Positions 18,680-59,522 of a stretch of DNA of 63,375 bases are shown here, piece after piece. Within the stretch, counting starts at the first letter, position 1, and every line of letters starts with the position of its first letter. The position numbers were made by a program, and so were the translations under genes. Below the pieces are notes generated by a model. It saw nothing but the letters and a program-made list of their open reading frames with translations, did no database searches and had not been told where the DNA came from. Location: assembly GCF_001194135.2 (NCBI RefSeq), contig NC_068981.1:146150294-146213668 (forward strand), read 5' to 3'. The stretch comes from Octopus bimaculoides (Eukaryota).

Positions 18680-19490
18680 TGAGCCTAAGTAACGAAAAGG
18701 TTATCAAACTGGCCAAACGGTTGGAAAGAGAAGGAATTAGTTACCCAATTCATGCAAAAACCGAGTATGTTGGAAGTACAGAACGCTGGCTATGGTTGAC
18801 AGATGAAAACCTGAAAATGCGAAACTGAATCATCGCTAGCTATGGCTGCTCAGAAACAAGCCATTAAAATGAATATGATAAAAACATTGATTGATAAAAC
18901 TCAGTCAGAGAGCAAACATAGAATCTGTGGGAAAGGAGACGAGAGTATAAACTGTCTCGTAAATGAATGCAGTAAGCGATCACAAAAGAACATAAGTGCA
19001 TTCATGATTGTTTCGATACAAAGTGCATTGGGATGTTAGCCAAGTGTATTGGTTCAATGTGACAGAAAAGTAGTATGAACACGAGCCAGAGGTTGTGATG
19101 ATGAATGATAATTAAAGTTTTATGAGATTTCTCTATAAAGACTGACCATTCTTTAGAAGCAAGGAGAGCAGATGCGATCGGAGAGGACAAAAAATGACAA
19201 AAAGTTTGCAATACAATGTGAAAATAGAGTGGACATCAAAGAAATTGTGAAAATTGATAAATATCAGGACATAGCCATAGAGAGATGAAGAGATTGTGGA
19301 AGTGAAAGGCAAGAATTATTTTTGTGGTAATTGGAGCGCTTGGAACAACACCCAAACTGCTATCTAAGATGAAGGATATTCGAATTTTGACACGCAGTAT
19401 TGACCTGCCGTGAAGTGCCATTCTGTATTCTGTATTCTTCATGAATCCTAAGAAGTATTCTTGATATTGCAGAAGACTTGTTGTCAAACC
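18680..19490 (+). mobile_element. Decayed RLE-type LINE (R4/Dong-like), C-terminal part
   Basis: WLWL..ENLK, AAQKQAIKMNMIKTLIDKTQSESKHRICGKGDESINCLVNECSK (CCHC knuckle), YEHEPEVV, then endonuclease region and VIGALGT; many stops and frameshifts. Confidence 0.85.
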
Positions 19491-20616: not shown

Positions 20617-20830
20617 TTAAGGCAGAATCGTTAGCACGCTGGACGAAATGCTTAGTGATATTCGCCCGTCGCTATGTTCTGAGATAAAAAAAAATTCCGC
20701 CGATTTCGACTTTGCCTTTCATCCTTTCGGGGTCAATAAATGAAGTACCAATAAGACAGTGGGGTTGATGCAATCGACTAACTCCCTCCCCCGAAGTTTC
20801 AGGCCTTGTGCCTATAACAGGAAAGATTAT
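20617..20830 (+). mobile_element. SINE family B
   Basis: GGCAGAATCGTTAGCACGCTGGACGAAATGCTTAG...TCGACTTTGCCTTTCATCCTTTCGGGGTC. Confidence 0.9.
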
Positions 20831-20836
20831 TTTCAC

Positions 20837-21370
20837 TATTATTATTACTTTATTGTCTCTGCACTGCTTCTAACGCTGGAGATGTACTACAGTATCAGCT
20901 GTTCATTACTATTGAACTAAGGTAACACCCCTTCTTTTTCGAGCACCATTCGGAGTATTTGAGCGGTTCCAAGCAGTGCTGTTATCTGCTAGTGCTCCAC
21001 CCTTATTGCAGCCCCTATTTGTTCCATGTACTTCTCAAGATTTTTACTCACTGTTCCCAGAGCTCCGACAATTATTGGTGCTACTACCACCTTTTTCAGC
21101 GACCACAACTGCTTAACCTCCCAAGCTAACCAGTCATATCTCTCGACTTTTCTTCCTTCCTTATCGCATATATTGTTGTCAGCTAGGCATGCTATATCTA
21201 TGATCCAGCATCGTTTGCTTTCTTTCTCATTGAACACTATGTCTGGTTTCCTATTCTCTATCTCATGGTCGCACTGAATCATAAAATCTCTTCGGGTTTA
21301 TGTTCGTACCACTTTTTTGCTCTGACATGTACATACTTGTTGCAAAGTGTCCAATGGACAATCCTTGCTA
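20837..21370 (-). mobile_element. 5'-truncated RLE-type LINE (R4/Dong-like) with 3' UTR and (TAA)n tail
   Basis: HWTLCNKY..KWYEHKPEE; IENRKPDIVFNEKESKRCWIIDIAC (PD-(D/E)xK-like); PIIVGALGTVSKNLEKY; LLGTAQILRMVLE; ends AATAAAGTAATAATAATAG. Confidence 0.9.
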
Positions 21371-21411
21371 TTCTTCTTCTTCTTCTTCTTCTTCTTCTTC
21401 TTCTTCTTCTT

Positions 21412-21508
<97 letters not shown>
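21371..21508. repeat. (CTT)n then (ATT)n compound microsatellite running into a gap
   Basis: Direct reading. Confidence 0.95.
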
Positions 21509-40665: not shown

Positions 40666-40946
40666 ACGGAGATATTTTGTTACTTAGAAAGCATCACAAG
40701 TGACGTAAGCTACGACTGATAACTATTGTACGTAGGTTTTGTATGACTTTACCAGCGGCATTCTCATTCTATATAACTTTACCTCAATGCATGTATATAA
40801 GTTCGTCTTGTTTTATTTTTCAAATTTCTCACCGATCATGACTCTGTTTCCAAGTTAGAAACAAGATTCAAATTTAAGCAGCATCAATTTAGTTGTAATG
40901 TATACTCGTGTGCCTGTATGTATCAATGCATGTATATATATAAAAA

Positions 40947-40989
<43 letters not shown>

Positions 40990-41089
40990 AAGTATAAATT
41001 TCTTTGCGTGCGTGAATCTGTATACTTTAATTTACATGCGGAGCATGTGCATGTATGTTTACTCGTTTGTATATGCAATACATGCCAAA

Positions 41090-44000
41090 AATTTCTAGAA
41101 TGTTTTAAATATTTGCACAGTTCTCTTAATGGCTTATAATTGTAAATCTTAATTAGCGGTATCCTTTTGGGATTTGTGAAGCTCAGTTTCTTAAGACTGG
41201 TGTTGAAACAACAAGTTACAGTTTCACAGTAATTACAAGTACAAAAAAGCTATGTATCAGCTAATATTTCATTAGTTCGCCGTGGATGTTTTTATTTTTA
41301 ATCATCTTTCACATTATGTTAACATCTGCTGGGCAATTAACTTTGACAACTATGCACACTTTTTCTCTATCCCAAACAATTAAGTCTGGTCTGTTACGCC
41401 TCTATTTTACTGAAGTCTTGATAAGAACATTCCACCATTATTCTTTCAAATTATGAGTGAGTCTGCCTCCTGATGACTCCGTTAGTTCTTATATTTTGAT
41501 CTTTAGAACTGTACTATCCACGGATTACATTGTATAATGTTTCGATCACGATATCATGCTACAAAGGATATTTTTTGACAATAATTTTGGATGGCTTTTT
41601 ACGATAGGAGTGATGCATTTGACGTTAATTTCACACAGTCTGCTTCAATCGTCGCATCTAGATATTTTACTTGTTTCACTATCCTTTTTTTGTACAAGTA
41701 TTTTGGTATCGTGGTGTGTGCGTACGAGTAGATGTAATCGTCTTACCTCGGTTTTCCTTTCCTCGACTGCGAGTCCGTCTTGCGGTATCCGATCCTCGAA
41801 GCTTGCCCCGACCCAAGGTACACCAGGTATAGCAGCTGCTTCTCCCAAACCTTCCCAAACCTAGACCGTCGCTTAACAGGTCTTGTCCTGACCGCAACCC
41901 CGTTCGAAAAGGGCACGAACGCCGATCGAGGCTCCCTCTGCCCTGTTTCCCCTTCCGGTCGACTCGCCCTTCCGGTCAGCCTCCCCAGACACTGACGTCA
42001 TGCCACAGGTATCACCTGTTCTTGGAATGTGAGAAGATATCATACAAAGAGGTAACATATTGGTTGTTAGTAATAGACAAAGTACAGAGGTTATTTTAGA
42101 CACTCTTACTTTGAAGCGTCCAAACAACGTAGCAAAGTATGGCCTTCTCATGGTGTGCATTCAGTCGATGTGTTGCGGTAGAGATAGATGTCTTTGGTCA
42201 TAAGTCGGGAAACATTTTCCGAGGATCACTTTCTCCCTTATAATCCATGCTATCCGCATCATATATTCATGTTTTCTACGACATGTTTTCATGAAATTTT
42301 CGCTATATATTCATGTCATCTGCGCCATGTATTCATACTTAATCCAGGGATACATTTCAAAGGGATATTATGCAACATACAAAGGTTGTTTGGATCTATA
42401 TTAAGCCCCAGCTTTCAGGTCATCTACAAAGAATCTATGTACTAGGTTGGTGTTTCTCTCCCCTTCAGATTTTTCTGAACAAAAAAGGTGAAGGAATTTA
42501 CAGGATATATGCACTATCCAAGCGAGACTGTCTCCTTGGAATATACTCCTGCAATGCTGTATCCTATCAGTCGCAATACGATCAGTTTCTGTATTTATCT
42601 TCAGATTGGTGGTCCAATGAAGTTAGGTTGCCTATGTTCTGATATCGATCTATGAAACTTTCGTAGATAGAATGGTCTCTAGCATCGGCGGGAAACAGAA
42701 TTTTCGTGTTATGACATAAGACTGTAACCAAGTCCTTCGTACGCCTTTGCACATTTGATACCTCAAATTTGTCCACAATACTCCGAATTTCCCCTTATTC
42801 TCCTGTTACTTGGTCGGATGATATCAAAGGGATTCTGAGGGAATAGGTTTAGACTAGTTGTATACATTTATGCATGAAACTCACCGATGCATTTTTCGCG
42901 ATTTATGCGGCTTTGTGTTTTGTGTTGGTTCTTCCAACACCAACCAGTTTTGTGGGATTGTATCTCTATTGAAAGCTTGCTGGTAAAGATTGATAGCTCC
43001 GATACGTCAAATTTCTGTACTAGTTTCCGAAAATCAAGTCTCAGTGCTCTCTTATCCTGAGGATTTTTTCAATCACAGTCTCAAGGGAAACATCATTTAT
43101 GCATATCTTTGGGGCAGTACAAGAAAAAGACTTCATGGAGAATTTCTTCTTATCCACGCTGTGTAATGATTAAGTACCATCTCCTCACTCCAGATTTTTC
43201 TCCACAATGGATCTGCATCTTCCTGAGAAAGAGACTCTATAATGCTTATTGATTATTTCTCCATATCTCTGTAAACTGCTGATTGCTTACAATTGATTTT
43301 GTTAATTATTTTCTTTTTCAGTAATTCTCTGGTAAAAGTTTTCAAATGAAAGCTCTGAAGATCTGCTTGGGCTAATTATTTTTCACTCAAGTGTTCTCGT
43401 TTTATCATCTACAAACATTGCTTCCATTTCATCTTTCAGTTTTGTTGCTAATGTTATTTGTTTGTATACGATAAGATTCGTTAGATCAACGATCTCTTTT
43501 ACCAGTTTTCCAAATCCATTATGGCACTTTTTCATCGTTTTGCATTTGTTTATGTTTTCGTAACTCCAAGATATTACTCTGAAGTTGTTTAGGGAACAAA
43601 TACACACGTAAAATTTGTTGAAATGAAGGGACATTACTCTGTTGCAACCTTTTCCTCTCGATTTCTTTTCTTACTCTTTATATCAGCTCAGTTAGTCCTG
43701 CCGGTGAAGAGAGTTCTTTCTTGTAGCGAGAGGTTTAAATTGAAATAGTCTTTTCTTGAAATATTGCACTAAGAATATATTTCAATTGTTTATATTCGTC
43801 ACACTTTTAGCTCGTTGTACACTTATCTTCATTGTTGTTACAGTCACTGACATTGTAATGCCGATTACTAGCATGACTGCGAGATAACGTTGTAATAGCA
43901 GGAATCTGGTCTGTTGGGACATGTGTTGTTATCATAAGTTCGTTCTAGTAAAGTTTTATTCGTGTCATATAGCCAACAGAGTTCTTGTTCGCCACTTTGC

Positions 44001-44222
44001 AGTAATTAAAAAGAATCATTGAGATCACAACTCTAGGTAACAAGAGATTCGATTTTTTAAAAGTAAAATCAGTTTCATTTAAAATTAAAAAGATTCTGTT
44101 TACCCTTCTCAATTATATTTTTGTTCTGTTCTTCATCAATGCTGTTAATATTATGTGCAGAATTGTAAACTGTAGCAAATGTCTGCATTGCGAATTCAAG
44201 TTTCAGTTGGGTATCGTGAAGT

Positions 44223-44224
<2 letters not shown>
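41090..44224 (-). mobile_element. Long decayed RLE-type LINE (copy C), interrupted by an LTR-like insert
   Basis: In order on the minus strand: GYMTRIK; PLWRKIWSEE; IPQNWLV; GIFQGDSL-like; HRFFVDDLK; [insert]; WWNVLIKT..NRPDLIVWDREKVCIVVKVNCPADVNI; AIKRTVQIFKTF. Confidence 0.8.
41531..42007 (-). mobile_element. GC/CpG-rich solo-LTR-like insertion
   Basis: TG...CA termini (TGTATAA...TGCCACA on plus), abrupt GC rise, internal short direct repeats, nested in a LINE. Flanks TACAT and GGTAT are not a clean TSD. Confidence 0.45.
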
Positions 44225-44254
<30 letters not shown>

Positions 44255-44265
44255 TGTATGTATGT
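44225..44265. repeat. (TATG)n tract between LINE copies C and B
   Basis: Direct reading. Confidence 0.95.
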
Positions 44266-44525
44266 CTCTTCTATTTTTCAATTATTATAAATCTTCCACT
44301 GAGGAGGGAGCCGGTTATCAACAAAGATACAAGGTTCCGTCTTTGGGATGTAGTTAACACAGACAAATTCATATTTGGAACTTCAGAAAAGTCTTGCATA
44401 TTTTTACTGTTCCACTCACAGATTGCACTTGTAATGTACGAATTAGCCAGTCGATTTCTCTTTCTGAAAATCCCAGTTTATCCTGATTCTCCTTTAAGCA
44501 TTTACTAACAAAACCTAGTGTTTCA
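44266..44525 (-). mobile_element. Short 5'-truncated RLE-type LINE (copy B), flanked by (TACA)n on both sides
   Basis: ETLGFVSKCLKENQDKLGFSEREIDWLIRTLQVQSVSGTVKICKTFLKFQI-stop with an open frame, then ~100-bp 3' UTR. Confidence 0.85.
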
Positions 44526-44609
44526 TGTATGTATGTATGTATGTATGTATTTATGTATGTATGTGTGCATGTATGCATGTATGTATATATGTATGAATGT
44601 ATGTATGTA
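44526..44609. repeat. (TATG)n tract between LINE copies B and A
   Basis: Direct reading. Confidence 0.95.
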
Positions 44610-45480
44610 ACTTTATCTTTTAATTCTTTGAATTATTTATATTAAGAAGTTGCTTAGAAAACAGCTAAGGTATATATAGAGCTACATTTTAAATATTAAA
44701 AAGTTTCGTATATTTTCCCTGTACCTCTTGCAGATTAAATTTGTAGAATTAAAATTAAATTCCCTCTTTCTTTCCCTAAAAACTCCAGATTTTTTAGATT
44801 ACTATTCACACTCTTAGCAACATCACATAACCGAATAATCTAATGATTATGGACACAAGTATAAATTAGTCATCTGAAGATAGAATTTGGGTGTTTTGGT
44901 GCTATTAATCAAATATTTTTCTCACTAATTTTGAACGAAATATTTACATCTGATGGGCAGCTGAACTCCATCATACAATATGAAATTTGTTTTTATATTC
45001 CAAACAATATATTTGGAATATTGCGAACATTTGGTGGTTATGTTACATCAATATTCTTCAGTTTGAAATGAGTGAATATACTCGACGCAAGAAATACCTT
45101 GTTTCCAGGGAAGACTTTTCTGCGAATGGAACTGTATATTATTTTGGCAACAGCTTTATACTATCTTGCTGACATTTCTTAGCTACTGCTGATTACATGT
45201 GTAATCTCAACGATTTGTGATGTAATCGACATTTTCGGTAGTATTTGGGGAGTTAAAAGACTTCACCCTCTCTTTCTTTAAACGCGTAGTTTGTAGTTGC
45301 CTCTTGCTCTTGTATTGAAAATGCATAACCTTCAAAATGTGACGTGATGTAATGGTCACGAGACCAGGGGAGGTTACACTTCCTGTCGATGTTGACATTC
45401 TCAAATTTCCTGGAAATCTACTCATGCATAACCTTTTGTTCTTATGCAGTGTATTTCCCTTTTAGGTTTTGTATTGAAGT
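44610..45480 (-). mobile_element. RLE-type LINE copy A (C-terminus, possibly with a 5' end joined by internal deletion)
   Basis: 44680-45200 gives IVMEFSCPSDVNISFKISEK...PIII..FGYV...RGTGKIYETF.IFKM-stop. Assigning 45210-45480 as its 5' part is tentative. Confidence 0.7.
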
Positions 45481-45987
45481 ATGTTCGTATGCCTGAATGC
45501 ATGTTTATATGTAGGCATATATGTATGTCTGTTTGCATGTAAGTATGTATGTAAGTATGTATGTATGTACGTAAGTACATACTTTATGCATATATGTATG
45601 TATGTTCTCTTTATGATCGGAGTTTTAGATCCCATTTTAGGCGAGCGTTTGCACGATGGTAGAGTTAAAAAGAAAAGGCAAAAAAAAAACGACTTCCTTT
45701 CCTTTCGTCATTCTTTGTGCAGCCTACTACTCTATATTTTATAAAATTCTGGAATATTTTGATTGTCTCAAATTTCTAGTGTTTATTGTCAGTAGTTATG
45801 AATTATGAGGTTACGTTCTATATTAGTAGTCAATTTTAATGGTCCTTTATTTAATCCACATAGGAACGATGAAAGAAAGTGTGAACCTGGCGGGATTTGA
45901 ACTAACAACGTAAAAAAACGAACCCAAACATCAATAGATATTTTGACTGATGGTTTACTGATTCTAGCATGGTTTTATAAGATATAT

Positions 45988-48680: not shown

Positions 48681-48849
48681 TATGTTTTCTATTTCCTTTA
48701 GTTTTACTAAAATTATTCTTTGAACTATCCAAGCCGGTCATCCAGTGCCAAAGCTTCCTTTTAAATCAAGACAGCTCTTGGAATGTATGAATATGTGTGT
48801 ATGTCATTATGTCGTATGAACATATGCAGATATGTAATGGTATGTATAT

Positions 48850-49200
48850 TCTCATTCAAGGAAACTCAAATGGAGAACATTTATGATGTTTTACACATCT
48901 TCAATTTCATTAATGGGTTGTGTTGAGAAGTGAGCTAGATTCGTTCTTTTTTGGAACACCAGCGTTTCCAAACTTTCATGCAAATCTTTTCTTACATAAT
49001 CTCTAATACTCATAAGAATAGGTACAAATGAAAATATGAGGCTTAACTTCAGATATGGTTAGAGGAATAGAAGCTTCGGAGTTCCAAAGTAGGAAACAAA
49101 AGGCATTATATTCTCATATGGTAGCGGAATATCATTTGTATTTCTAATTAAAAAATTGCCTATTAATTTTCTGCATGAAACCATTGGTACTAAATTATTA
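48850..49200 (-). mobile_element. Decayed C-terminus of the same RLE LINE family as copies A-C
   Basis: VPILMSIRDYV..LHESLETLVF...AAGATGTGTAAAACATC (KMCKTF-like), followed by degenerate CATA-rich sequence. Confidence 0.55.
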
Positions 49201-51129: not shown

Positions 51130-51720
51130 GTACCAACATGAATGACAAAGATAGGATAGTGTTAAAACAAAGATTGATGAAGAAAATGGAGAAGTTTTTT
51201 ATTTTTTTTAATAGTAAATCTATTACGTGCTTACCATTGCTTTGGAAACTGATTTCGTAGCAGCTGTTTAGCTTTCTTAAGAAGGCGTGACTGTTACTAG
51301 GAGAACAATAGAGATGCAGAAAGAAATCAAAAGGAACTTCTGATCTATTGTTTAACACTAGAATAATACTAAATGAAGAGCAGACCAGAAAGAATTTAGC
51401 TATTCGTTGGATAGACAGGAAAGAATACGGTAACATACGACTGTGTTGACTTTTGGAGTGCCAAAATATCTCGAGGCCAATAAGAAAATTAATAGTTTAT
51501 TTAATAAAGCGTTGAGATCATGGCAAGTTGAACTGAAGAGCGGAAGTGAGTCGCTGGGAAATGTGATAATCCGGAAGAGAATATTTCAGGCAGACTCGTT
51601 TTCTCTAAATATTCCTTTCACAAGCATACTGGGGAAGTTTAGCTCTGATTATGAGTTTGCTGTGAACTAGAAGATATAGACGCATTTGCTGCAAATTAAT
51701 AGTAATCCTACTTCCTTCAT
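51130..51720 (+). mobile_element. R4/Dong-like LINE RT fragment
   Basis: ITCLPLLWKL; KNLAIRWID; WQVELKSGSESLGNVIIRKRIFQADSFS. Confidence 0.75.
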
Positions 51721-59311: not shown

Positions 59312-59522
59312 GAAGACGGCGAGCTATCAGAATCGTTAACAGGCCGGGTAAAATGCTTAGTGGTATTTCGTCTTTTCGTTCTGAGTTCAAATTCTGCCGA
59401 GGTCGACTTTGCTTTTCATCCCTTTCGGGGTCAATAAAATAGGTTTTAGTTGAGCACTGGGGTCGATGTAATCGACTTATCCCTGAACTTGCTCGCCTTG
59501 CGCCAAAATTTGAAGCCAATAG
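59312..59522 (+). mobile_element. SINE family B
   Basis: GACGGCGAGCTATCAGAATCGTT...GAGGTCGACTTTGCTTTTCATCCC...CCAAAATTTGAAGCCAAT. Confidence 0.9.

What the first reader, a model, noticed from the sequence alone, without database searches (positions are those of the whole stretch)
41090..45610. Head-to-tail array of RLE-endonuclease LINEs separated by (TACA)n: candidate tetranucleotide-targeting retrotransposon lineage
Seen: three same-orientation copies (A 44610-45200+, B 44266-44525, C 41090-44224) carry homologous C-termini (..GTVKICKTFLKF-like) of different ages. Copies A and B each end in a (CATA)n tract, and the next copy begins right after it. Short copy B has the repeat on both sides, and a degenerate CATA tract also lies 5' of copy A (45480-45610). 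A fourth decayed copy at 48850-49200 ends in CATA-rich sequence. Established: RLE-bearing non-LTR elements are often sequence-specific; Dong of Bombyx sits in (TAA)n. Inference: this family cleaves (TACA/TATG)n and its tail regenerates the target, producing self-stacking arrays and feeding the (CATA)n abundance. I do not know of this target being described for this lineage, but I cannot check.
Basis: partly seen in the sequence, partly recalled or inferred. Interest (0 to 1): 0.75.

Follow-up and report, generated by a model that had tools for sequence, protein, structure and literature searches.

The report
LINE family that lands in (ACAT)n repeats
Three decayed copies of a jumping gene sit head to tail, each separated by an ACAT four-letter repeat; intact relatives elsewhere have the same repeat on both sides, so the family most likely inserts into that repeat, a new target for a known kind of element.

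Summary
On the minus strand, three same-orientation copies of one non-LTR retrotransposon lineage lie head to tail: A 45495-44610, B 44524-44266, C 44224-40989. Sense-strand (ACAT)n tracts stand exactly at each junction.

Intact relatives are single-ORF proteins of about 1150 aa. They carry RT, a CCHC knuckle and a C-terminal restriction-like endonuclease (RLE) that aligns end to end with solved R2 proteins. They have no N-terminal zinc fingers.

Ten independent loci from other assemblies show sense (ACAT)n at both the 5' and 3' ends of full-length and 5'-truncated copies (26 sense tracts, 1 antisense). Four of them hold head-to-tail arrays. Related families nested within the (ACAT)n group carry (ACTT)n instead. 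A Dong-like fragment in this window sits in (TAA)n.

Best reading: a microsatellite-specific RLE LINE lineage whose own tail recreates its target, so copies stack.

Not shown:
- cleavage specificity;
- clade (R4/Dong or HERO), because no reference sequences were available;
- any contribution to (ACAT)n abundance.

One relative (L005) has a 55-bp flanking duplication that argues for 5' repeat addition at integration.

Microsatellite-specific LINEs are known; this target was not found in the searchable literature. I rate it a new variant of a known kind, of moderate interest.

The parts
45479..45605 (-). Degenerate (ACAT)n tract directly 5' of copy A (in element sense)
   Evidence: TRF period 4, 31.5 copies, 66% matches. 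Junction sequence.
44610..45495 (-). Copy A: 5'-truncated, decayed copy. It holds the linker, a CCHC remnant, the RLE and the C-terminus (aa ~872-1146 of P0003), plus a ~90-bp 3'UTR.
   Evidence: tblastn with several relatives, E down to 5e-19. HMM hit at 45402-45265, E 7.5e-9. Many stops and frameshifts.
44525..44609 (-). (TACA)21 tract: the tail of copy A and the 5' flank of copy B
   Evidence: TRF 21.2 copies, 85% matches. Junctions '..gataaagt|TACA' and 'ACAT|gaaacactagg'.
44266..44524 (-). Copy B: the last 50 codons of the ORF, without stops (44521-44372, stop codon at 44371-44369), plus a 103-bp 3'UTR. It looks the youngest of the three.
   Evidence: 60% identity to P0003 aa 1102-1151, E 1e-11. 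Open reading frame 44369-44578.
44225..44265 (-). (ACAT)10 tract, perfect: the tail of copy B and the 5' flank of copy C
   Evidence: TRF 10.2 copies, 100% matches. Junction.
40989..44224 (-). Copy C: a near-full-length, heavily decayed copy. Features: RT motifs at 42544-42419; a CCHC-equivalent stretch with three of its four C/H positions substituted near 41644-41590; RLE PD motif near 41398-41384; C-terminus at 41145-41089; ~100-bp 3'UTR.
   Evidence: tblastn hits collinear with aa 299-362, 563-638 and 938-1150 of P0003. HMM hits E 1e-11 and 1e-6. Translations.
40915..40988 (-). Tail of copy C: (CA)n followed by (TACA)-like units
   Evidence: TRF rows 40947-40988 (TG, 95%) and 40915-40985 (TGTA, 82%). 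The Argonauta relative has the same mixed ACAT/AC tail.
41740..42010 (.). 59% GC block of about 270 bp inside copy C, with no similarity to the family; a probable later insertion
   Evidence: Unique in the window. It interrupts the RT-to-CCHC linker, which is otherwise shortened.
48784..49200 (-). Possible fourth, very decayed C-terminal fragment (49200-48890) with a degenerate CATA-rich tail (48826-48784)
   Evidence: Only a weak HMM hit at 49034-48942, model positions 1102-1132, i-E 0.19. Sequence. Not significant on its own.

Best explanation
The region is a stack of three independent insertions of a non-LTR retrotransposon lineage. The lineage encodes one ORF with this order of parts: a short helical N-terminal domain, reverse transcriptase, a CCHC knuckle, and a C-terminal restriction-like (PD-(D/E)XK) endonuclease. 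Its RNA ends in (ACAU)n.

Most likely mechanism (inferred from what is established for R2 and proposed for Dong):
1. The element integrates by target-primed reverse transcription into (ACAT)n microsatellites.
2. The (ATGT)n strand is nicked.
3. Its 3' end pairs with the (ACAU)n tail and primes cDNA synthesis.

Each new copy then lies between (ACAT)n on both sides, and its own tail offers a fresh target. Later copies of any family of the lineage land in the tails of earlier ones and build head-to-tail arrays.

In this window, copy B is short, has an open reading frame and a perfect tail. It probably inserted last, into the older tract between A and C.

Shown: the anatomy, the homology, the flanking pattern in many loci, the strand bias, and the family-specific repeat unit.
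Inferred: which strand is nicked, and whether the protein, the RNA tail or both read the target.
For: 1. Domains.
- P0003 matches RVT_1 at 2e-25 and zf-RVT. It matches R2 RT structures at E 3e-28.
- The C-terminal profile aligns over 200 residues with the CCHC + RLE of solved R2 proteins 9nl3/9dou, E 1e-12.
- The Asp of the PD motif and the Lys are invariant, the CCHC and RH residues are near-invariant, and the middle acidic residue is E or D in all 17 aligned sequences.

2. Window junctions. The copies differ: 61-65% DNA identity and different truncation points.

3. Relatives from other assemblies.
- L001: copy | (CATA)42 | 5'-truncated copy | (CATA)58 | full-length copy of another family.
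- L003: unrelated DNA | (CATA)41 | full-length 5' end.
- L005, L006, L007-L010 and L018-L021 have sense (ACAT)n at both ends.
- 5'-truncated copies with no LINE upstream also start at (ACAT)n: L018 and L019.

4. In the 10 loci there are 26 sense and 1 antisense (ACAT)n tracts, p = 4e-7; the tracts cover only 2.6% of the sequence.

5. Arrays recur in L001, L006, L018 and L019.

6. Families L012-L015 and P0002 carry (ACTT)n instead. L012 has it at both ends, L015 at its 5' end, and L013, L014 and L002 at the 3' end. None of them holds an (ACAT)n tract.

7. These (ACTT)n families are 47-54% identical to the nearest (ACAT)n families, while (ACAT)n families differ among themselves down to 35%. The (ACTT)n state is therefore nested within the (ACAT)n diversity.

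8. Tract purity falls from B's own tail (100%) to the tract 5' of B (85%) to the tract 5' of A (66%). This fits B landing in an older tract.

9. Precedent: RLE LINEs are mostly target-specific, some for microsatellites (PMC4640811). Dong inserts in (TAA)n in insects, molluscs and cnidarians (PMC7998251).
Against:
- Target-site duplications cannot be seen inside a microsatellite, so integration into a pre-existing tract is inferred from flanks only.
- L005 is bracketed by a (GATA)n + 55-bp direct duplication (96% identical) that lies outside its 5' (TACA)n tract. There the 5' repeat seems to have arrived with, or been made during, the insertion, into a (GATA)n site.
- The Argonauta copy has its nearest 5' tract about 800 bp upstream of the ORF.
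- Most short contigs may simply have been broken by assemblers at the repeats. That explains why the contigs end there, but not why the repeats are there.
- The hosts of nearly all relatives are unknown.
Confidence: 0.7

Rival explanations
1. The repeat is only the element's tail. The 5' repeat is added at integration: after reaching the 5' end of the RNA, or after stopping early, the reverse transcriptase jumps to the (ACAU)n tail of a second RNA. This adds a 5' tract, or a whole second copy, in one event. Alternatively, the RNA starts in the donor's upstream tract. Under this reading the target is not (ACAT)n, and arrays are single events.
For: - L005: a 55-bp direct duplication plus (GATA)n brackets the whole (TACA)n-LINE-(ACAT)n unit.
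- L001 copies 1 and 2 are 99.8% identical, as a one-step tandem would be.
- End-to-end template jumping is established for the R2 reverse transcriptase (my own knowledge: Bibillo and Eickbush; not checked here).
Against: - In the window, A, B and C differ in family and age (61-65% identity), and the internal copy B is only 259 bp. They are not one event.
- The third copy in L001 and the copies in L006 and L019 belong to different families.
- The tract 5' of B is less pure than B's own tail.
- No flanking duplication was found around six other units or arrays.
Confidence: 0.17
2. The array is a segmental tandem duplication of one copy plus its microsatellite.
For: Same orientation and regular copy-tract-copy layout.
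Against: The copies share only 61-65% DNA identity over about 100-130 bp, are truncated at aa ~872, 1102 and near 1, and differ in decay. The tracts differ in length and purity.
Confidence: 0.02
3. Chance adjacency in a genome rich in (CATA)n.
For: The window holds many tetranucleotide and dinucleotide tracts.
Against: There are only 9 perfect minus-sense tracts in about 60 kb, and three lie exactly on junctions. The same pattern, with a 26:1 strand bias, appears in 10 loci from other assemblies. The repeat unit changes with the family.
Confidence: 0.02

Closest known systems
Dong (R4/Dong clade, Bombyx mori; DongAg, DongBg, ostracod Dong)
   Same: Both have a single ORF with RT, CCHC and a C-terminal restriction-like endonuclease, and no N-terminal zinc fingers. 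Both insert into a microsatellite that also forms the element's tail (PMC3812793; PMC7998251). A (TAA)n-flanked fragment of this type lies in the same window at 21369-20846 and matches the family HMM at 3e-21. Cephalopod annotations report abundant, recently active 'Dong-R4' LINEs averaging about 4.2 kb (my calculation from the coverage and insertion counts in the paper's table), similar to the ~4 kb full-length contigs found here (PMC13282606).
   Different: The target and tail are (ACAT)n, or (ACTT)n in related families, not (TAA)n. Membership by RT phylogeny was not tested. The Myb-like N-terminal domain reported for R4/Dong could not be confirmed.
Waldo (R1 clade: WaldoAg1/2, WaldoFs1)
   Same: Waldo inserts into (ACAY)n microsatellites, nearly the same repeat (PMC3812793).
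   Different: Waldo encodes an N-terminal AP-type endonuclease and belongs to the R1 clade. The present lineage has a C-terminal RLE, and Pfam finds no AP endonuclease domain. The shared target would be convergent.
R2 (28S rDNA-specific; solved structures 9dou, 9nl3, 8gh6)
   Same: The RT and the whole CCHC + RLE module are homologous. R2 provides the TPRT model.
   Different: R2 has N-terminal zinc fingers plus Myb and targets 28S rDNA. Here 0 of 40 full-length proteins show an N-terminal zinc-finger pattern, and the flanks are microsatellites.
HERO (some families, e.g. the leech family cited in Repbase Reports) and Togen ((TG)n, fish)
   Same: These are RLE LINEs, and some families are microsatellite-specific (PMC4640811).
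   Different: The targets differ. Relationship by RT phylogeny was not testable here. O. vulgaris is reported to have few HERO copies (13) against 1129 recent Dong-R4 copies. That makes HERO the less likely home, but this is an inference.

Membership tests
RLE-encoding non-LTR retrotransposons (R2 group) | Reverse transcriptase domain of the non-LTR type | tested here: met
   P0003 matches RVT_1 at E 2.1e-25 and R2 proteins at E 2.8e-28. Copy C retains IFQGDSL and FVDD.
RLE-encoding non-LTR retrotransposons (R2 group) | CCHC knuckle followed by a C-terminal PD-(D/E)XK endonuclease, downstream of the RT | tested here: met
   In alignment A1 the Asp of the PD motif and the Lys are invariant, the CCHC and RH residues are near-invariant, and the middle acidic residue is E or D in all 17 sequences. 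The profile aligns with R2 RLE domains 9nl3/9dou at E 1e-12 over profile positions 13-214.
RLE-encoding non-LTR retrotransposons (R2 group) | Single ORF and no AP endonuclease | tested here: met
   Full-length loci carry one ORF of about 1130-1200 aa. Pfam finds only RVT_1 and zf-RVT.
R4/Dong clade | RT groups with R4, Dong and Rex6 references in a phylogeny | not testable with these tools
   No R4, Dong or HERO reference sequences could be obtained. The one supplement found holds only R2, CRE and BLAG RT sequences. The last homology search was lost to my own error.
R4/Dong clade | No N-terminal zinc fingers | tested here: met
   0 of 40 full-length proteins have a CCHH/CCHC-like pattern in their first 420 residues.
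R4/Dong clade | Divergent SANT/Myb-like N-terminal domain (Schön et al. 2021, PMC7998251) | tested here: inconclusive
   A conserved ~70-aa N-terminal domain has invariant R10, Y12, W18, K47, W50, D51, P55 and L65. AlphaFold2 predicts three helices with mean pLDDT 84.7. There is no Myb/SANT hit in Pfam, PDB sequences or Foldseek.
R4/Dong clade | Target is rDNA (R4) or (TAA)n (Dong) | tested here: not met
   The flanks are (ACAT)n or (ACTT)n. Only the separate fragment at 21369-20846 lies in (TAA)n. The general property 'microsatellite target' is met.
R2 clade sensu stricto | N-terminal zinc finger(s) plus Myb, and insertion in 28S rDNA | tested here: not met
   No zinc-finger pattern. No rRNA match in the window or in the related loci (Rfam).
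Waldo / R1 clade | N-terminal AP endonuclease | tested here: not met
   Pfam finds no AP endonuclease domain in P0003. The endonuclease is a C-terminal RLE.
HERO clade | RT groups with HERO references | not testable with these tools
   No HERO sequences were at hand.

The most novel reading that the evidence does not exclude
Target choice in this lineage may be set mainly by the element's own 3' repeat, which pairs with the nicked microsatellite, rather than by a protein reading head. A one-base change in the tail unit (ACAT to ACTT) would then be enough to move a family to a new microsatellite. That would make this a naturally RNA-retargetable RLE retrotransposon.

Hints:
- The (ACTT)n families are nested among (ACAT)n families.
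- Their N-terminal domain, including the third helix, shows no residue that separates the two groups.
- One (ACAT)n element appears to have entered a (GATA)n tract.
Probability: 0.25. Interest if true: 0.8.

Novelty: new variant of a known kind. Interest (0 to 1): 0.45.

Why it matters
Microsatellite-specific LINEs have been known for about twenty years: Dong in (TAA)n, Waldo in (ACAY)n, Togen in (TG)n. The principle is therefore not new.

What seems new is a large, diversified RLE lineage whose families sit in (ACAT)n. The C-terminal domain profile finds 107 representatives at the 50%-identity level at E <= 1e-30, and 635 proteins match P0001 at E <= 1e-10. Nested within it are relatives that sit in (ACTT)n.

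That offers a natural pair of related enzymes with targets one base apart. It is a convenient system for asking what sets target choice in R2-like elements, which are now being developed for site-specific DNA insertion.

It also bears on cephalopod and other marine-animal genome annotation. Insertions inside microsatellites are hard to detect with short reads. This may explain why a 'Dong' element showed almost no non-reference insertions in octopus (PMC9115989), although another study counts over a thousand recent copies (PMC13282606). That link is an inference.

I could not check Repbase or Dfam, where such a target may already be recorded.

Tried and rejected
- **Pfam on the raw frames.** Scanning the three raw minus-strand frames (stops as X) found nothing.
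- **DNA comparison of the copies.** It gave only short 61-65% matches. Protein space was needed.
- **Sequencing reads.** No read-level or empty-site evidence could be obtained.
- **Rfam.** No family reached the gathering score in the window or in eight related loci. In particular there is no HDV-like ribozyme at the 5' ends at that threshold.
- **Clade assignment.** I looked for R4/Dong/HERO reference sequences in paper supplements. Only R2, CRE and BLAG RT sequences and a 25-residue block of R4/HERO were held, so no reference tree was built.
- **My error.** spent the last homologous-protein search on a wrongly typed, out-of-frame string instead of the (TAA)n-flanked fragment's protein, and found nothing.
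- **The search for related loci.** A 7-sequence alignment worked.
- **N-terminal domain.** Pfam on each member, a PDB sequence profile and Foldseek gave no Myb/SANT match.
- **Trees.** The NJ trees are poorly resolved. Bootstrap values were computed but not printed, so I cite none. Whether (ACTT)n arose once or several times is open.
- **Host identification.** The listing of cluster members gave no names. Only one relative is named, from Argonauta hians.
- **Flanking duplications.** A search around units and arrays was positive only for L005.
- **Sequence upstream of the 45605 tract.** It has no further copies ending in (ACAT)n in the window.
- **Papers.** Novick 2009 and Biedler 2015 were not held, nor was Kojima 2019.


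Full report
**What is in the window**

Read on the minus strand, 45605->40915 has this order:
- a degenerate (ACAT)n tract, 45605-45479, 66% matches;
- copy A, 45495/45478-44610;
- (TACA)21, 44609-44525, 85% matches;
- copy B, 44524-44266;
- a perfect (ACAT)10, 44265-44225;
- copy C, 44224-40989;
- a (CA)n/(TACA)-like tail, 40988-40915.

Raw six-frame translations gave no Pfam hit. By eye, copy C retains IFQGDSL and FVDD (RT), a CCHC-equivalent stretch in which three of the four C/H positions are substituted, and 'RPDLIVWD...VNCPADVN', the PD-(D/E)XK motif.

A stitched translation of copy C found two proteins, P0001 and P0002. P0001 ends in '..SGTVKICKTFMKFST', which matches copy B's '..SGTVKICKTFLKFQI*'.

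Mapping relatives back onto the window gives these extents:
- A = aa ~872-1146;
- B = aa 1102-1151 (60% identity);
- C = aa 299-1150 in collinear pieces, all in P0003 numbering;
- a weak, collinear N-terminal motif further 5' in C.

The copies share only 61-65% DNA identity over about 100-130 bp and are truncated at different points. They are therefore separate insertions, not a tandem duplication.

The window has 9 perfect minus-sense tracts of at least 3 units in about 60 kb. Three tracts falling exactly on three junctions is not a chance pattern.

**What kind of element it is**

A search with P0001 found 635 proteins at E <= 1e-10. Full-length members are 1130-1200 aa. The only named one is from the octopod Argonauta hians.

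P0003 (1151 aa) has these features:
- RVT_1 at residues 445-707 and zf-RVT at 910-975;
- RT similarity to solved R2 proteins (9nl3, 9dou) at E about 3e-28;
- a C-terminal 215 residues whose alignment has a near-invariant CCHC and RH, an invariant Asp in the N(R/K)PD motif, an acidic residue in 'I(I/V)(E/D)', and an invariant Lys.

The profile of that C-terminal alignment aligns over its whole length with the CCHC + RLE module of R2 proteins at E 1e-12. The 'GTVKICKTF' end is thus the last helix of a restriction-like endonuclease domain.

None of 40 full-length proteins has an N-terminal zinc-finger pattern. Instead there is a conserved N-terminal domain of about 70 aa, predicted as three helices with mean pLDDT 84.7. 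I could not show that it is Myb/SANT-like. Schön et al. report such a domain for R4/Dong elements (PMC7998251).

The element is therefore an RLE-type LINE of the R2 group, without the R2, NeSL or CRE style of N-terminus.

Cephalopod repeat annotations report abundant, recently active 'Dong-R4' LINEs:
- five families and 1129 recent insertions covering 4.7 Mb in Octopus vulgaris (PMC13282606);
- a full-length 'Dong' in the O. bimaculoides library (PMC9115989).

This makes R4/Dong the likely home. I had no R4, Dong or HERO references to test it, and I lost my last homology search to a typing error.

The C-terminal profile finds 107 representatives (50% clusters) at E <= 1e-30 and 1616 at E <= 1e-10, so the lineage is large.

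**Do relatives share the flanks?**

Yes. I fetched the DNA around relatives that are 35-54% identical to one another in the last 480 residues.

| Locus | Layout |
|---|---|
| L001 | 3' end of a copy, (CATA)42, a copy truncated at aa 327, (CATA)58, then the full-length 5' end of a different family |
| L003 | unrelated DNA, (CATA)41, then a full-length 5'UTR |
| L005 | (TACA)n complex, element, (ACAT)23 |
| L006 | two copies, with (ACAT)55, (TACA)15 and (CATA)9+30 |
| L007-L010 | the same full-length element from four samples; the contigs begin with (TACA)n and end with (ACAT)n |
| L018 | (ACAT)23, a copy truncated at aa 197, about 920 bp of (ATAC/ACAT)n, then the next copy |
| L019 | three copies separated by such tracts |
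| L020, L021 | full-length contigs bounded by the repeat at both ends |
| L004 (Argonauta) | ends in a short ACAT/AC tail, as copy C does; its nearest 5' tract is about 800 bp upstream of the ORF |

- Full-length 5' ends resemble each other between families: '(CATA)n|cgacaccg..' and '(TACA)n|ttagacaccg..'.
- Truncated copies in L018 and L019 start at (ACAT)n with no LINE upstream.
- Across the ten loci there are 26 sense and 1 antisense tracts (p = 4e-7), and the tracts cover 2.6% of the sequence.

**The repeat goes with the family**

A metagenome scan with the C-terminal alignment returned seven loci.
- L012 is a full-length element with (CTTA)n at its 5' end and (TTAC)n at its 3' end.
- L015 starts with (TACT)14.
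- L013 and L014 end in (CTTA/ACTT)n, as does L002, the locus of P0002.
- None of these holds an (ACAT)n tract.

These (ACTT)n families are 47-54% identical to the nearest (ACAT)n families. (ACAT)n families differ among themselves down to 35% and occupy both halves of a midpoint-rooted NJ tree (supports not read). The (ACAT)n state is therefore probably ancestral, and (ACTT)n, one base different per unit, is derived. Whether that happened once or more is unresolved.

In the window itself, a more distant RLE fragment at 21369-20941 matches the family HMM at 3e-21.
- It carries the motif 'RKPDIV...IIDIA...IVGALGTV..LLGTAQILR'.
- It is preceded by (TAA)n(GAA)n at 21508-21371.
- It ends near a short (TAA)3.

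That is the pattern described for Dong.

**Mechanism**

The best-supported reading is target-primed reverse transcription into (ACAT)n. The element's (ACAU)n tail pairs with the nicked (ATGT)n strand, and each insertion leaves a fresh tract at its 3' end that later insertions use. This accounts for:
- the both-sided flanks;
- the strand bias;
- the recurrence of arrays built from different families;
- the purity gradient in the window, where B's own tail is perfect and the tracts 5' of B and A are 85% and 66% pure. This fits B, the only copy with an intact reading frame, having landed last between A and C.

Which strand is nicked, and whether the protein or the RNA reads the target, is inferred from R2 and Dong and is not shown here.

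The N-terminal domains of (ACTT)n and (ACAT)n families show no residue that separates the groups. This leaves room for tail-guided targeting.

**A contrary observation**

In L005 the whole unit (TACA)n-LINE-(ACAT)23 is bracketed by (GATA)n plus a 55-bp direct duplication that is 96% identical.
- That looks like a long target-site duplication around an insertion into a (GATA)n tract, with the 5' (TACA)n lying inside the duplication.
- In that case the 5' repeat came with the RNA or was added by template jumping.
- This is the main rival explanation for both-sided repeats and for some arrays. For example, L001 copies 1 and 2 are 99.8% identical.
- It does not fit the window, where the three copies differ in family and age and the internal copy is 259 bp long.
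- No such duplication was found around six other units.

**Comparison with the literature**

- RLE LINEs are mostly target-specific, some for microsatellites (PMC4640811).
- Dong targets (TAA)n in insects, molluscs and cnidarians.
- Waldo, an AP-endonuclease element of the R1 clade, targets (ACAY)n.
- Togen targets (TG)n.
- I found no paper describing an RLE LINE in (ACAT)n or (ACTT)n. Repbase Reports and Dfam could not be searched.

**Verdict**

- It is a new target variant of a known kind of element, of moderate interest.
- Interest would be higher if the ACAT/ACTT switch proves to be tail-guided.

Noticed in passing
window 20846-21508 (minus strand): A 5'-truncated fragment of a different, Dong-like RLE LINE (C-terminal about 145 aa; motif 'RKPDIV..IIDIA..IVGALGTV..LLGTAQILR'). 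It is preceded by (TAA)n(GAA)n and ends near a short (TAA)3, so a (TAA)n-type relative lies in the same window. An assembly gap (a run of N) starts in the (TAA)n tract at about 21510.
   Followed up: partly
window 41740-42010: A 59% GC block of about 270 bp inside copy C. It is unique in the window and has no similarity to the family proteins. It is probably a later insertion of unknown origin.
   Followed up: partly
window 20690-20830, also 46124-46009, 2857-2754, 59389-59484, 15583-15463, 19682-19569, 26826-26770: A short interspersed repeat ('..ggcacaaggcctgaaa..') with at least seven copies at 71-79% identity. One copy lies directly after the tail of the Dong-like fragment.
   Followed up: no
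L006 8492-9566 and 13778-14043: Two units without a LINE ORF (about 1.07 kb and about 266 bp), each bounded by (ACAT)n on both sides inside a LINE array. The start of the 1.07-kb unit resembles the sequence that follows another (TACA)8 at 2557. They are candidate non-autonomous elements that use the same target or tail.
   Followed up: no
L005 8441-8505 and 12818-12872: A 55-bp direct duplication (96% identical) plus (GATA)n brackets the whole (TACA)n-LINE-(ACAT)n unit. It may be a long target-site duplication of an insertion into (GATA)n.
   Followed up: partly
L018 5903-6826: About 920 bp of almost pure (ATAC/ACAT)n between two LINE copies. Tracts between stacked copies can grow very long.
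   Followed up: no
L018 2750-2810: A tRNA-like sequence in antisense orientation lies directly upstream of the (ACAT)23 tract that precedes a truncated LINE copy.
   Followed up: no
window 18836-19386 (+), 51135-51497 (+), 33560-33497 (-): Very weak, non-significant matches to the family HMM or to relatives (E 0.004-0.5). They may be further decayed fragments or noise.
   Followed up: no
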